Shown: positions 8,849-27,195 of the stretch, piece after piece
Numbering within the stretch: the first letter of the stretch is position 1
Layout: every line of letters begins with the position of its first letter
Origin: Salpingoeca rosetta
Taxonomy: Eukaryota > Protista > Choanoflagellata
Assembly: GCA_033442325.1 (NCBI GenBank)
Contig: JAWQFM010000006.1
Location: 1,160,630 to 1,187,824, forward strand
Length of the DNA: 27,195 nucleotides
Reading direction: 5' to 3'
The notes under the pieces: generated by a model
What the model saw: only the letters and a program-made list of their open reading frames with translations
The model's database searches: none
What the model was told of the DNA's origin: nothing
Position numbers and translations under genes: made by a program

Positions 8849-10465
<1,617 letters not shown>

Positions 10466-14460: not shown

Positions 14461-15075
14461 NNNNNNNNNNNNNNNNNNNNNNNNNNNNNNNNNNNNNNNN
14501 NNNNNNNNNNNNNNNNNNNNNNNNNNNNNNNNNNNNNNNNNNNNNNNNNNNNNNNNNNNNTTTAGGAGAAAAAAAAAAACAATCATCTGTGCTCCGTGTC
14601 TGCTGATGAACCAGCTGCACGATCGCTCAGCGTGATCGCCATTTCTGTATCCTCTCGTTGGGGAGCGGCGTCGTGCTGCGGAGGGGGTCGGTGAGGAGGT
14701 GACGATGCGTTGCTGTGATCAGAGTCTCGAGCGCGTCTCCGCCGTCCGCGCTGTAATGTATCTTTTAGTCACAATTCTGTGTTCTTGGGGAGGATTAGGT
14801 AGTCTGCGATCGGCCCGGTCCTCACTTCTTTTCTATTCATTTATCTTTCAGTTCCGTCGGCAGAGCGGGAATGCGTGTGTGTGTGTGTGGGTGTGTGGGC
14901 GGGCGCCACGTCGTGGCATCGTGCCCATCATTGGTGGCGGGCTGGACCTCGATAACACGTGTTCTCCCTGTGTGTTTTGTCTCGCGGTGTGACGCAGGAG
15001 GACTATGCTGCCATCCGTGACAATTACTTCCGCACTGGCGAGGTGAGGGAACGATGCCTATGCCACAGTACCACG

Positions 15076-18721: not shown

Positions 18722-23852
<5,131 letters not shown>

Positions 23853-24560
23853 GACAAAGGTGGAAGAGCAAAGGTGGGAAAACCCAAGGGCGCGAAGCTA
23901 CACCACAAAGCTGAAAAGGAAGAACCGACCGCGAGGGGAACGAGTAAATGTCTACCGCGTCAACACGTGAACGTTAGAGGTCGGTGGAGGGGAAGGGAGA
24001 GAAGGGAAGGGGGGAGGGAAGGGGGGGGAGGCGCGATGACAACACGTGCACGAGGCGGTTAGGGTGTGTGTGGATGGTCGTGCGTGGGTGGGCTTTGTTG
24101 TATTTATGAGTGCTTGCGTGAGGAATATGTTGTGAGGGGAAGGGTGCGTGCTTGGTGGTGCGTGGCCGCTGATGAATGAGAGAGATTTGGGGGGAGAGAG
24201 ATTGAGATTGAGCTTGAGCTTGAGAGTGAGAGAGGCGTGTGTTTGCTGTTGGGATGGGAGGCTGTGCACGCTGCTGAGTCTGCAGCAATGCAAGGCACGA
24301 CGAAGATGAAGACAGGTAAGGAGGGCGCTGTGATGAGGCAGGCTCAAGAGTTCGATGAAAAGTGGGATGGATGATTGCTGCGCGACAGCTCCGTCCGTCG
24401 GCCTCTTCGTCTTGCTCGCTCCCACTTTGATCTTGGCTCGTCCAGATGAGGCAGGGAGGGTGCGTCGTGGTCCGTGTCGCGGAGGAGTGGTCGGGGAAAT
24501 GACAGCTACTTCGTTGGCAGCGGCACGCGAACGAACGCTCTGCGCACAAGCGCAACAAAT

Positions 24561-24622
24561 GGCGAAAAGAACACCATATTTTACACTAATTATCGCACGC
24601 CGCGAAATTCAAAATTTTCGCC
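24561..24622. promoter_or_regulatory. E2F-like (CGCGAAA/GGCGAAAA) and CHR-like (TTCAAA = TTTGAA reverse) motif cluster in the divergent RBBP6 / SAP-DCR intergenic region
   Basis: GGCGAAAA 24561-68, CGCGAAA 24601-07, TTCAAA 24608-13, TTTTCGCC 24615-22 in a locally AT-rich patch. Confidence 0.4.
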
Positions 24623-24624
24623 TG

Positions 24625-25308
<684 letters not shown>

Positions 25309-25312
25309 GGTC

Positions 25313-27195
25313 ATGATGCTGAGCGAGGATGCAGTGGATGGACTGCCGCGACGGCAGCTGCAAACACTATGCAAGGAGCGAGGCATCAAGGCCAACAGCA
25401 AGACCGTGAAGCTGGTTGCGGATTTGAAGGCTTGGATTCGCGCCAACCAAGAGGAGCCACAGCAAGAGGAAGGACAAGAACAGAAGGAACCAGGGGATCT
25501 GTCGATGCCCACAAACCCAGAACATCACGAACAGCACAAGCAGCAGCAACAACAAGGACACGCGCAAGATCACAACAGCGAGTGCACGCAACAACACGGC
25601 GCAAGCGCACAAGGCGAAACAGGCAAGAACAACACCGAGCAGCTCCAACACCAGCAACGCCAACACCAGCAAATGCCAGAGCGGCCGCAGCAACAGCAGC
25701 AACTACAAGAACACATGCAGACCCAGAGACAACAAACATCGACAGACAACGACACAACCCACATGCAAGCCGAAGCTGGGTTCTGTGTTGTGCACGGTGG
25801 AGTAACACAGCGGCCACATGTTCGGTTGCGACTGGTCAATGGCTGTGTGATGGTGGGGGACGCCGCCAGCAACACTGGCAGTGGTACCGACATCGGCAGC
25901 AACAGCTGTGCCAGCACGGCAGACGCACAGCTGCTGCGACTGGTGCTGGAACCAGCCATCTTGCTTGCAGGCAAGTCGACCCGCCCAACACATATGCCAG
26001 ACAACATGATCTGCAGTCTGTGCTGCGAGGCCAATGCGAAGAGGCTCCTCCGCCTCACCTCTTGCCCACTTCAGGAGGAAGCCCAGCAACAGCAGCAGCA
26101 CCACCACCAGCACCACCACCACCAGCCCACATTCTCGACACATCCGCACGCACGCGCACAGCATCCAAATGCAGCAGCGCAAACCCACCGGCGGCAGCAC
26201 CAACACCAACAATCAGGTCGACGGGTTGAGTCGCGGTTGCCGAGATTTGACTCACCAGCGCGGCAAGGCTTTGAGCATCACGAGCAACATCCACCAGCTC
26301 ATCCCGCCACAGCAACACGCGCCGCAATTGCTAGGCAGCCGACTAGGAACGCCAGCGAACCGGCAACAACAGCGACGACAACGACAGCGACAAAGACAGC
26401 GACAACGCCAACGACAACAAGCGAAGCAAAACCGACAACAGCAACTGTGACAAGGAGCGGGCGTCCAGGGCGAACGTCGATGAAGAAAACCACGCAACGA
26501 CAGCAGCTGCGGCGACACAAACAGTCCAGGCGCGACAAGGCGCTGGCGGCGCGAGATCGTCGCCGCACCCACATCATCGACCGTATTCGCGACATTCCTG
26601 ACACCAGCAAAGGCAAGGAGAACCAGGAAGCCGCCACGGCCGTCAGCACCAAGGACGCTGTGCTGACCACTCCTCCTCCTCCTCCGAAACACGCCCACCA
26701 GCACCACCAGCAAAGGCGAGCAAGTGGTCATGTCGATCGGTTCCGACGAAAGAGCATGTCTAGGCGGCGCCCGCTCAGCCCCAGGTTCGAGGGTGGTCGC
26801 AGCAGCTTGTGCCCTGACGCTGAAAGCACGCCGTCCCTGCCCGCAAGCCCCGCTGTCCGACGCGAGCGTGGCGAGCGGCTTTCCCTGGGCTGCCTCCGTC
26901 CCCCGAGGCCAGTGCGTGTGAGCAAGGCCGGAGGAGGAGGAGGAGGAGGAGGAGGAGGAGGCTTTGAGGTGAAGGAAGATATCGAGTACGCACGCCGTGT
27001 GGATCAGCTCTTGCGCGCGGGGCTTGCTGAGGAGGAGCTGCTCTCCCTTGCAACACGTGGGGGCCCCAACGCCAAAGTGCAACACAGCCCTCCACGCCGG
27101 GCCACCTTCAGCAGCGAACCAGCCACCGATGAGATGGAAAGCAGCCCCAGCGACGGCGCTGATGTTGACGATGCTGTTGAAACCGGCATGGTGGT
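25313..27195 (+). CDS. SAP-domain protein with DPPA2/4-like DCR domain (partial, open to right edge; absent from ORF track)
   Basis: Stop-free frame of 627 codons from ATG 25313. SAP-like LPRRQLQTLCKERGIKANSKTVKLVADL near the N-terminus; FCVVHG...VRLRLVNGCVMV...LRLVLEPA...PTHMPDNMICSLCCEAN at 25781-26035; KEN at 26615-26623. A cacag acceptor-like site at 25307 and the upstream gap mean an additional 5' exon is possible. Confidence 0.8.
   Translation, partial: MMLSEDAVDGLPRRQLQTLCKERGIKANSKTVKLVADLKAWIRANQEEPQQEEGQEQKEPGDLSMPTNPEHHEQHKQQQQQGHAQDHNSECTQQHGASAQGETGKNNTEQLQHQQRQHQQMPERPQQQQQLQEHMQTQRQQTSTDNDTTHMQAEAGFCVVHGGVTQRPHVRLRLVNGCVMVGDAASNTGSGTDIGSNSCASTADAQLLRLVLEPAILLAGKSTRPTHMPDNMICSLCCEANAKRLLRLTSCPLQEEAQQQQQHHHQHHHHQPTFSTHPHARAQHPNAAAQTHRRQHQHQQSGRRVESRLPRFDSPARQGFEHHEQHPPAHPATATRAAIARQPTRNASEPATTATTTTATKTATTPTTTSEAKPTTATVTRSGRPGRTSMKKTTQRQQLRRHKQSRRDKALAARDRRRTHIIDRIRDIPDTSKGKENQEAATAVSTKDAVLTTPPPPPKHAHQHHQQRRASGHVDRFRRKSMSRRRPLSPRFEGGRSSLCPDAESTPSLPASPAVRRERGERLSLGCLRPPRPVRVSKAGGGGGGGGGGGFEVKEDIEYARRVDQLLRAGLAEEELLSLATRGGPNAKVQHSPPRRATFSSEPATDEMESSPSDGADVDDAVETGMV

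What the first reader, a model, noticed from the sequence alone, without database searches (positions are those of the whole stretch)
25313..26056. SAP + DCR architecture of the pluripotency factors DPPA2/DPPA4 in an apparently unicellular holozoan
Seen: an ORF the track missed (no stop in window) with an N-terminal SAP-like motif (LPRRQLQTLCKERGIKANSKTVKLVADL), a Gln/His linker, then FCVVHG-x7-VRLRLVNGCVMV-(low-complexity insert)-LRLVLEPA-x9-PTHMPDNMICSLCCEAN. Knowledge (recalled): DPPA2/DPPA4 have SAP followed by a C-terminal DCR domain with WCVVHG...V.L.F.AG...V...L.LLPA...P.H.EDNMLC..C...N. Motif order and the CxxH + CxxC putative zinc ligands are all retained. These proteins are studied mainly in mammalian pluripotency/zygotic activation and Xenopus nuclear assembly. 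Inference: the module predates animals and may be an ancient chromatin/microtubule cell-cycle factor.
Basis: partly seen in the sequence, partly recalled or inferred. Interest (0 to 1): 0.88.

Follow-up and report, generated by a model that had tools for sequence, protein, structure and literature searches.

The report
DPPA2/4-like SAP–DCR protein in choanoflagellate
A transcribed Salpingoeca rosetta gene (PTSG_11644) encodes a DNA-binding SAP domain followed by a small cysteine/histidine domain that is probably, though not provably with these tools, a distant relative of the conserved C-terminal domain of the vertebrate pluripotency factors DPPA2/DPPA4, which would date that module to before the first animals.

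Summary
The ORF from 25313 to the window end is real. It is 100% identical to NCBI hypothetical protein PTSG_11644 of Salpingoeca rosetta, so public annotation has it, but without a DCR call. RNA-seq shows + strand transcription, and the low-complexity insert is retained rather than spliced.

The N-terminal SAP fold is confirmed: AF2 pLDDT is about 90, and the top solved-structure matches are SAP domains.

The DCR reading is probable but below threshold.
- I recovered three orthologues from unnamed or environmental assemblies. All have SAP, the same Cys/His block, and a new conserved C-terminal module.
- In all four proteins Pfam DCR (PF14047) is the top or only hit on that block. It spans nearly the whole profile at 19–25 bits (E 2e-5 to 1e-3), under the 27-bit cut-off.
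- The best noise in a six-frame scan of the whole genome is 17 bits.
- ESM Atlas structure search ranks two DCR clusters first (TM 0.58–0.59), from a low-confidence model.

Against it, no DPPA protein came back from the large sequence searches, my own AF2 models of the domain are poor, and language-model features are inconsistent.

I put domain homology at about 0.75. Function (a DNA plus nucleosome tether) is inferred only. The published range for Dppa2/4 is tetrapods. The scan's only other note here (s1-434359) is this same stretch.

The parts
24036..24057 (+). Short first exon of the NCBI model (MTTRARG plus the first base of a Val codon), with a GT donor at 24058
   Evidence: P0002 starts MTTRARGVVMMLSED, and the DNA reads atg aca aca cgt gca cga ggc g|gt. 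The junction was not checked with reads.
24058..25307 (+). Intron of the NCBI model. It holds (CA)n 24637-24790, an assembly gap of 402 N at 24791-25192, and (CA)n 25193-25305, ending in the AG acceptor at 25306-25307.
25308..27195 (+). Main coding exon of PTSG_11644. The frame is still open at the window end, and the sequence downstream reads N.
   Evidence: RNA-seq run X19 covers all 30 bins, with first mates mostly on the - strand.
25343..25447 (+). SAP domain (residues 11-45), helix-loop-helix
   Evidence: AF2 pLDDT is 86-93 over residues 10-50. The best solved matches are SAP domains: Hcc-1 Z 6.0, then SLX4, E1B-AP5, MKL1 and Ku70. BLASTP against a coral NUSAP1-like SAP gives 6e-9.
25448..25780 (+). 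Gln/His/Glu-rich disordered linker
   Evidence: pLDDT below 50. It is not conserved among the orthologues.
25781..25858 (+). DCR-like domain, N-terminal half: C158-V-V-H161 knuckle plus a predicted beta-hairpin (VRLRLVNGCVMV)
   Evidence: C, V, H, L, L and G are invariant in the four orthologues. Pfam DCR matches in two stretches. The strands come from low-confidence AF2 models.
25859..25933 (+). S. rosetta-specific 25-residue Ser/Thr/Gly-rich insert inside the DCR-like domain; it is coding, not an intron
   Evidence: The insert is absent from the three orthologues. Read depth is continuous and no joint falls here in RNA run X19. NCBI's model also keeps it.
25934..26035 (+). DCR-like domain, C-terminal half: LVLEP strand, RP, then D230-N231-x-x-C234-x-x-C237-x-x-x-N241
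   Evidence: Residues 216-241 align without gaps to Pfam DCR positions 42-67 of 67. V, L, D, N, C, C and N are invariant in the four orthologues.
26483..26572 (+). Conserved basic patch (residues 391-420, RRHKQSRRDKALAARDRRR); a possible nuclear localisation or DNA-contact segment
   Evidence: A conservation island in the four-way alignment. The function is inferred.
26834..26896 (+). C-terminal module, part 1: SLPASPAVRRERGERLSLGCL
   Evidence: S, P, RR, RGE, G and L are invariant in the four orthologues. No Pfam or PDB match.
26930..26962 (+). Poly-Gly run (11 G) specific to S. rosetta, lying between the two parts of the C-terminal module
26963..27094 (+). C-terminal module, part 2: a charged helix (EDIEYARRVDQLLRAGLAEEELL) followed by the conserved V-x-x-SPP
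   Evidence: Conserved in the four orthologues. This conservation runs past the point where NCBI's model splices out (NAK|AGVA). No similarity to NuSAP.

Best explanation
The ORF is the main exon of the expressed S. rosetta gene PTSG_11644. It is a mostly disordered nuclear protein with three conserved modules.

1. An N-terminal SAP domain. This fold is shown, and SAP domains are established DNA binders.
2. A domain of about 62 residues, plus a lineage-specific loop insert. It is most probably a remote homologue of the DCR domain of DPPA2/DPPA4 (probable, not proven). I infer that it is a treble-clef-like zinc module. C158/H161 would form a knuckle, and C234/C237 would sit at the start of a helix.
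3. A new C-terminal module with no known relatives, made of an SP-rich motif and a charged helix.

By analogy with DPPA2/4 and Xenopus Dppa2, the likeliest mechanism is a chromatin tether. SAP would hold DNA, DCR would contact histones or nucleosomes, and the C-terminal module would recruit an unknown partner. All functional steps are inferred; none was tested.
For: Gene and expression:
- 100% identical to PTSG_11644.
- Stranded RNA-seq coverage across the whole ORF, with the insert retained.
- Single copy: orthologue L015 matches only this locus in the genome.

SAP:
-.

DCR:
- PF14047 is the top or only Pfam hit on the isolated domain in all four orthologues. S. rosetta: 22.3 bits, E 1.4e-4. 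P0006: 23.0 bits, E 8.6e-5, profile positions 2-65. L015: 24.8 bits, E 2.4e-5, positions 4-67. L014: 19.1 bits, E 1.4e-3, positions 3-67.
- Domain length agrees with the 67-position profile to within 2-4 residues.
- In a six-frame scan of the whole 55-Mb genome, the best other hits reach only 17.3 and 16.1 bits. Both lie in Cys-rich junk frames.
- ESM Atlas structure search with the Atlas's own model ranks two DCR clusters first, TM 0.58-0.59 over 72-74 residues. Its feature search also lists a DPPA4 cluster first, at 0.77.
- A poor AF2 model of a different orthologue still ranks the DPPA4 cluster first.
- The architecture is the same, with SAP preceding DCR.

Conservation:
- Islands fall at SAP, both DCR halves and the C-terminal module.

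Functions of the relatives:
- SAP binds DNA and the C-terminal domain associates with histones (PMC7752079).
- DPPA2/4 bind nucleosomes and multimerise (PMC13138344).
Against: - All DCR scores are under Pfam's 27-bit gathering cut-off.
- In the genome-wide scan this locus scored only 14.7 bits, because the insert splits the domain.
- No DPPA-family protein was recovered. This covers phmmer against 1.84 billion representatives and three word-seeded searches of 5.8 billion proteins, including a SAP+DCR profile.
- AF2 models of the domain are low confidence, pLDDT about 25-45. The Atlas model that gave TM 0.58 has mean pLDDT 0.46.
- The Atlas feature search with the L015 domain did not list DCR.
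- The literature places Dppa2/4 only in tetrapods (PMC6500978). Vertical descent would therefore need loss, or divergence beyond recognition, in most animal lineages.
- Unlike DPPA2/4, the domain is not C-terminal; more than 380 residues follow it.
Confidence: 0.65

Rival explanations
1. The Cys/His block is an unrelated, choanoflagellate-specific small zinc-binding domain. Its resemblance to DCR would be coincidental, or convergent on a CxxH...CxxC scaffold. The protein would then be a lineage-specific SAP protein with no evolutionary link to DPPA2/4.
For: - All Pfam scores are below the curated cut-off.
- Scores of 16-17 bits arise by chance in Cys-rich frames of the same genome.
- No reciprocal hit to any DPPA protein.
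- A generic zinc-ribbon family also appears weakly: Zn_ribbon_10, E 0.13.
- ClpX-type zinc fingers appear among the weaker structure rows.
- The L015 feature search found no DCR.
- There is a large phylogenetic gap to tetrapods (PMC6500978).
Against: - Four orthologues, sharing only 25-50% identity in this block, each pick DCR as the sole hit.
- The matches span the whole profile with near-gapless length agreement, not just the Cys motifs.
- They score 2-8 bits above the best genome-wide noise.
- Two DCR clusters out of 7.7 million rank first structurally.
- The DCR-specific partner domain, SAP, sits upstream.
Confidence: 0.2
2. The protein is the choanoflagellate representative of the NuSAP lineage. 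NuSAP proteins are spindle and microtubule-associated SAP proteins. On this reading it acts mainly on mitotic microtubules, and the DCR-like block is an add-on.
For: - By sequence the SAP is closest to NuSAP-type SAPs. P0003, a protist protein with Pfam NUSAP, scores E 1.3e-13. Coral NUSAP1-like protein P0007 gives BLASTP 6e-9.
- P0003 matches only this locus in the S. rosetta genome.
- No other NUSAP-domain signal was found in the genome.
- Xenopus Dppa2 itself inhibits microtubule assembly (PMC4028354).
Against: - PF16006 does not hit this protein at E up to 10.
- The conserved C-terminal module shows no similarity to either NuSAP-like protein by hhalign, probability 0.1%.
- Similarity is confined to about 45 residues of SAP.
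- The PF16006 genome scan also rang in no control genome, so its negative result is weak.
Confidence: 0.1
3. The ORF is a chance open frame in GC- and CAG/CAA-rich DNA, not a gene.
For: The region is low-complexity and several long overlapping ORFs exist on both strands.
Against: - Stranded RNA-seq coverage.
- An NCBI gene model.
- Three orthologues with conserved islands in exactly this frame.
Confidence: 0.01

Closest known systems
DPPA2 / DPPA4 / Xenopus Dppa2/4 (SAP + DCR, Pfam PF14047)
   Same: - The domain order is the same: an N-terminal SAP, a disordered linker, then a domain of about 65 residues.
- That domain matches the whole DCR profile, and the match ends at the ...C-x-x-C-x-x-x-N motif.
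- It is the best family by Pfam and by Atlas structure search.
   Different: - Scores are below Pfam's cut-off, and there is no reciprocal sequence hit.
- The S. rosetta copy carries a 25-residue loop insert.
- The domain is followed by more than 380 residues, including a conserved C-terminal module absent from the roughly 300-residue vertebrate proteins.
- No Dppa2_A (PF14049) region was detected.
- The host is a unicellular organism with no embryo or germ line.
- It is a single gene, so there is no paralogue to form a heterodimer.
NuSAP (nucleolar and spindle-associated protein, PF16006)
   Same: The SAP domain is of the same subtype (LQxLCKxxGIKANSK), with E 1e-13 to 6e-9. Both are long, basic, disordered proteins.
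   Different: There is no NUSAP domain match. The C-terminal module is unrelated. NuSAP has no DCR-like Cys/His domain.
Treble-clef zinc fingers (for example the ClpX zinc-binding domain)
   Same: - The ligand pattern fits. A CxxH knuckle comes first, followed by a beta-hairpin. The second CxxC pair sits at the start of a helix in the low-confidence models.
- ClpX-type zinc-finger clusters appear among the weaker structural rows.
   Different: TM is only 0.35-0.36. There is no sequence-family match, and zinc binding is untested.

Membership tests
DCR (Pfam PF14047, Dppa2/4 conserved region) | Match to the family HMM at or above the curated gathering score (27 bits) | tested here: not met
   Scores are 22.3, 23.0, 24.8 and 19.1 bits for the isolated domains of S. 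rosetta, P0006, L015 and L014. E-values run from 2.4e-5 to 1.4e-3, and the matches cover profile positions 2-67. These are significant E-values, but all lie under the cut-off. I therefore call it a probable remote homologue, not a filed member.
DCR (Pfam PF14047, Dppa2/4 conserved region) | Reciprocal sequence searches retrieve DPPA2/4-family proteins | tested here: not met
   phmmer against 1.84 billion representatives returned only the orthologue P0006 and two repeat-protein artefacts. Three searches of 5.8 billion proteins returned no PF14047 protein at E up to 10. A 65-residue domain needs roughly 30-40 bits in databases of this size, so this test has low power.
DCR (Pfam PF14047, Dppa2/4 conserved region) | Fold shared with DCR domains | tested here: inconclusive
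   With the Atlas's own model, the top two rows are DCR clusters, TM 0.58-0.59 over 72-74 residues. That model has mean pLDDT 0.46. My AF2 model of L015 (pLDDT 41.5) ranks the DPPA4 cluster first, but at TM 0.36. No solved DCR structure was found in the PDB by sequence.
LLPA ... EDNMLC..C...N) | not testable with these tools
   I could not obtain any authentic DPPA2/4 sequence or the HMM consensus, and a full-text search for the motifs found nothing. What is shown: C-V-x-H, L-x-L, G, V-L, D-N, C-x-x-C and N are invariant in the four orthologues, and N241 aligns to the last profile position.
DPPA2/4 architecture | SAP domain N-terminal to the DCR in the same polypeptide | tested here: met
   SAP lies at residues 11-45 and the DCR-like block at 157-241. 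All three orthologues show the same order.
DPPA2/4 architecture | Protein of about 300 residues with the DCR at the C-terminal end | tested here: not met
   More than 386 residues follow the domain, including a conserved C-terminal module. L015 is 670-690 residues long.
DPPA2/4 function | Chromatin or histone H3 binding through the C-terminal domain; multimerisation | not testable with these tools
   These properties are known for the vertebrate proteins (PMC7752079, PMC13138344). The one complex prediction I ran gave no verdict.
SAP domain (PF02037 / PF18953) | Helix-extended loop-helix fold of about 35 residues with the conserved L..L/G pattern | tested here: met
   The AF2 model has helices at 22-31 and 40-55 at pLDDT about 90. 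Top VIA matches are solved SAP domains, Z 5-6. UniRef names the protein 'SAP domain-containing protein'. Pfam SAP HMMs hit only weakly, and only in L015 and P0003.
NuSAP (PF16006) | Match to the NUSAP domain or its C-terminal microtubule-binding region | tested here: not met
   No PF16006 hit at E up to 10. hhalign of the C-terminal module against two NuSAP-like proteins gives probability 0.1%.

The most novel reading that the evidence does not exclude
The SAP-DCR cassette of the vertebrate pluripotency and epigenetic-priming factors DPPA2/4 descends vertically from a protein already present in the last common ancestor of choanoflagellates and animals. There it would have served a general chromatin, and possibly mitotic, role. 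Its conserved C-terminal module would have been lost, or replaced, on the way to tetrapods. S. rosetta is genetically tractable, so it would then offer a single-gene, non-embryonic system to find out what a DCR domain actually does.
Probability: 0.5. Interest if true: 0.72.

Novelty: new variant of a known kind. Interest (0 to 1): 0.6.

Why it matters
DPPA2/4 are studied almost only as mammalian germline and early-embryo factors. The papers I could read describe them as restricted to mammals, with single orthologues in amphibians, reptiles and marsupials, and describe their C-terminal domain as of unknown function (PMC6500978).

A choanoflagellate SAP-DCR protein would move the origin of the module back before animals. 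It would suggest a basic chromatin function that was later co-opted for pluripotency. The invariant CxxH/CxxC quartet gives a testable idea that DCR is a zinc module. S. rosetta also offers a single-copy gene for knock-out and localisation. If the homology fails, what remains is an ordinary lineage-specific SAP protein.

Tried and rejected
- Intron reading of the insert. The 78-nt stretch 25853-25930 has GT...AG ends and is in frame. I rejected it as an intron: RNA run X19 has continuous depth there and no joint, and NCBI keeps it as coding.
- AF2 single-sequence model of residues 1-270. Only the SAP domain folded with confidence.
- AF2 with the four-orthologue alignment. Mean pLDDT was 41.5, unusable for a PDB comparison.
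- Large sequence searches. None returned an animal DCR protein. One call failed because max_evalue is capped at 10. P0004 and P0005 are giant bacterial-type repeat proteins and are artefacts.
- Other PF14047 hits in the genome. L011 and L012 are Cys-rich non-coding frames, not paralogues.
- PDB sequence searches with the protein, the DCR profile and the C-terminal profile gave nothing meaningful.
- Atlas feature searches with the L015 domain and with the C-terminal module gave no informative hit.
- Complex prediction, two copies of the DCR-like domain plus zinc: no verdict, score 0.00, and the partner's own fold was uncertain. This is not evidence either way.
- Literature. No paper links Dppa2/4 or PF14047 to choanoflagellates or early animals. 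None mentions PTSG_11644, and none names the source samples of the orthologues.
- I did not type an insert-deleted version of the domain into Pfam, nor any DPPA sequence from memory.
Full report
WHAT IS THERE

Translating 25313-27195 on the + strand gives 627 codons with no stop.
- SAP-like segment at residues 11-45 (25343-25447).
- A Gln/His/Glu-rich linker.
- FCVVHG at 157-162 (25781-25798), then VRLRLVNGCVMV.
- A 25-residue Ser/Thr/Gly-rich insert (25859-25933).
- LRLVLEPA...PDNMICSLCCEAN, ending at N241 (26035).

The first 260 residues are 100% identical to NCBI PTSG_11644, a 601-residue hypothetical protein of Salpingoeca rosetta. UniRef calls it 'SAP domain-containing protein', and it carries no precomputed Pfam domain. 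The window is contig 6 of a 55.4-Mb, 68-contig assembly. The gene is publicly annotated, but without any DCR call.

GENE STRUCTURE AND EXPRESSION

NCBI's model adds a seven-codon first exon (24036-24057). It is spliced across an intron (24058-25307) that holds two (CA)n tracts and a 402-N assembly gap. I did not verify that junction.

Three 2026 RNA-seq runs carry reads on the ORF. Run X19 covers all 30 bins, with first mates mostly on the - strand, as expected for a + strand mRNA in most stranded libraries.

The insert inside the Cys/His domain could be read as an in-frame GT...AG intron (25853-25930). However, depth is continuous across it and no joint is seen, so it is coding.

At the 3' end NCBI splices out after ...NAK. 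The window frame continues VQHSPP, and that motif is conserved in all three orthologues. NCBI's last splice is therefore probably wrong. The real stop lies beyond the window, where the sequence reads N.

ORTHOLOGUES

An exhaustive phmmer search with the Cys/His domain found one true relative, P0006. It comes from two Logan assemblies. Its SAP exon lies upstream on the same contig, at L009:747-911.

The SAP exon P0001 led to an ENA metagenome contig. Its next gene encodes the Cys/His domain and the C-terminal module (L014:1101-2240).

A metagenome scan gave L015 (MDTD01018439.1). This is a single ORF of 670-690 residues with SAP, the Cys/His domain without the insert, and the C-terminal module. 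L015 matches only this locus in the S. rosetta genome, so the gene is single copy.

I could not determine the taxonomy of the three source samples.

In a four-way alignment, conservation is confined to islands: SAP, both halves of the Cys/His domain, a basic patch (residues 391-420), and a C-terminal module (508-528 and 551-594). Invariant residues in the Cys/His domain are C158, V159, H161, two Leu, a Gly, V-L, D230, N231, C234, C237 and N241.

SAP

The AF2 single-sequence model has pLDDT 86-93 over residues 10-50, with a helix-loop-helix. A Foldseek-independent search of 48,161 solved chains puts SAP domains on top: Hcc-1 at Z 6.0, then SLX4, E1B-AP5, MKL1, Ku70, PIAS1 and SF3B2.

By sequence the SAP is closest to NuSAP-type SAPs. 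These include a protist NUSAP-domain protein (E 1.3e-13) and a coral NUSAP1-like protein (BLASTP 6e-9).

IS THE Cys/His DOMAIN A DCR?

Evidence for:
- Pfam DCR (PF14047) is the top or only hit on this block in all four proteins. On the isolated domains the scores are 22.3 bits (E 1.4e-4; S. rosetta, in two stretches because of the insert), 23.0 bits (8.6e-5; P0006, profile 2-65), 24.8 bits (2.4e-5; L015, profile 4-67) and 19.1 bits (1.4e-3; L014, profile 3-67).
- On the full-length proteins the E-values are 0.008, 0.0015, 0.00048 and 0.025.
- The matches run over nearly the whole 67-position model, and lengths agree within 2-4 residues. The spacing between the CxxH and CxxC motifs is therefore shared, not just the motifs themselves.
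- A six-frame scan of the whole 55-Mb genome gives an empirical noise level. The best other hits reach 17.3 and 16.1 bits and lie in Cys-rich junk frames.
- The ESM Atlas holds this protein. Structure search with the Atlas's own model ranks two DCR clusters first, one of them SAP+DCR, at TM 0.58-0.59 over 72-74 residues. The feature search lists a DPPA4 cluster first at 0.77, which the tool itself rates as only a lead.
- A poor AF2 model of a different orthologue still ranks the DPPA4 cluster first and the SAP+DCR cluster fifth, at TM 0.33-0.36.

Evidence against:
- Every score is below Pfam's 27-bit cut-off.
- In the genome-wide scan this locus alone reached only 14.7 bits, for half the domain.
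- No DPPA protein came back from any large search. A 65-residue domain needs roughly 30-40 bits there, so the power of that test is low.
- My structure models are unusable, and the Atlas model that gave TM 0.58 is itself low confidence.
- The feature search with the L015 domain did not list DCR.

I put domain homology at about 0.75.

LIKELY MECHANISM (inferred)

The invariant C-x-x-H and C-x-x-C pairs suggest a treble-clef-like zinc module. In the low-confidence models, strands follow the first pair and a helix starts at the second pair. ClpX-type zinc fingers also appear among the weaker Atlas rows. The S. rosetta insert would sit in a loop between strands.

For the vertebrate proteins, the papers report several relevant points:
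- SAP binds DNA and the C-terminal domain associates with histones (PMC7752079).
- DPPA2/4 bind nucleosomes and multimerise (PMC13138344).
- In Xenopus, SAP tethers Dppa2 to chromatin, while a C terminus not conserved in mammals inhibits microtubule assembly (PMC4028354).

The simplest reading is a chromatin tether: SAP on DNA and DCR on histones or nucleosomes. The new C-terminal module (an SP-rich motif plus a charged helix) would recruit an unknown partner. That module has no Pfam, PDB or Atlas relative and is unlike NuSAP. None of this was tested. A homodimer prediction gave no verdict.

RIVALS

An unrelated zinc module with coincidental similarity is the main rival (about 0.2).

A NuSAP-lineage reading rests only on the SAP subtype and on the absence of another NuSAP signal in the genome. 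That negative result is weak, because the PF16006 scan also rang in no control genome.

A non-gene artefact is excluded by the RNA-seq and the orthologues.

NOVELTY

The papers I could search describe Dppa2/4 as mammalian paralogues with single orthologues in amphibians, reptiles and marsupials, and describe the C-terminal domain as of unknown function (PMC6500978). No paper links them to choanoflagellates or early animals, and none mentions PTSG_11644. I could not inspect InterPro's taxonomic range for PF14047; the Atlas DCR clusters are mostly Chordata.

If the homology holds, this is a deep extension of a family thought to be tetrapod-specific. It comes in a variant architecture, with a long tail, an extra conserved module and a single gene. 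I rate it a new variant of a known kind, with interest 0.6.

The scan's only other note on this stretch (s1-434359) is the same finding read again.

Noticed in passing
window 27068-27195 (compare P0002 C terminus): NCBI's model of PTSG_11644 splices out after ...NAK and ends AGVA. The unspliced frame continues VQHSPP, and this is conserved in all three orthologues. RNA-seq depth also continues to the window end. The annotated 3' end is probably wrong.
   Followed up: partly
window 9189-9288, 14461-14560, 24791-25192 and about 38 dinucleotide runs across the window: All three N gaps in the window directly abut long (CA)n/(GT)n microsatellites. Such runs of 16 nt or more occur about 38 times in 27 kb. 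Assembly breaks coincide with dinucleotide repeats.
   Followed up: no
window 25460-25708: All four runs, including the probably-DNA contig run X1, show a G>C at 25469 and a 'goes back 249' joint (25708 to 25460) with the same 12 extra letters. This most likely reflects reads or contigs from another CAG/CAA-rich locus laid onto the Gln-rich linker, not a real rearrangement.
   Followed up: no
window 26747: C>T in 4 of 20 reads of RNA run X19 only. It could be an allele, an error or editing; I could not tell.
   Followed up: no
L009:747-911 and L009:1296-2393: The Logan gene call P0006 starts inside an intron. The real first exon, encoding the SAP domain, lies about 400 nt upstream on the same contig, so the database protein lacks its SAP domain.
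   Followed up: yes
whole genome G000: No match to the NUSAP domain (PF16006) anywhere in the S. rosetta genome. A protist NuSAP-like protein (P0003) matches only the SAP of this locus. The control genomes did not ring either, so absence is not shown.
   Followed up: partly
RNA runs X17, X18, X19 on window 25305-27195: At similar sequencing depth, run X19 lays 144 reads on the gene, against 37 for X17 and 20 for X18. This may reflect condition- or cell-type-dependent expression. Sample identities are coded.
   Followed up: no
window 20389-22760 (- strand): An earlier scan note places an RBBP6 gene immediately upstream. The long ORFs I scanned there gave no Pfam hit, probably because the exons are short. 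I did not examine it further.
   Followed up: no
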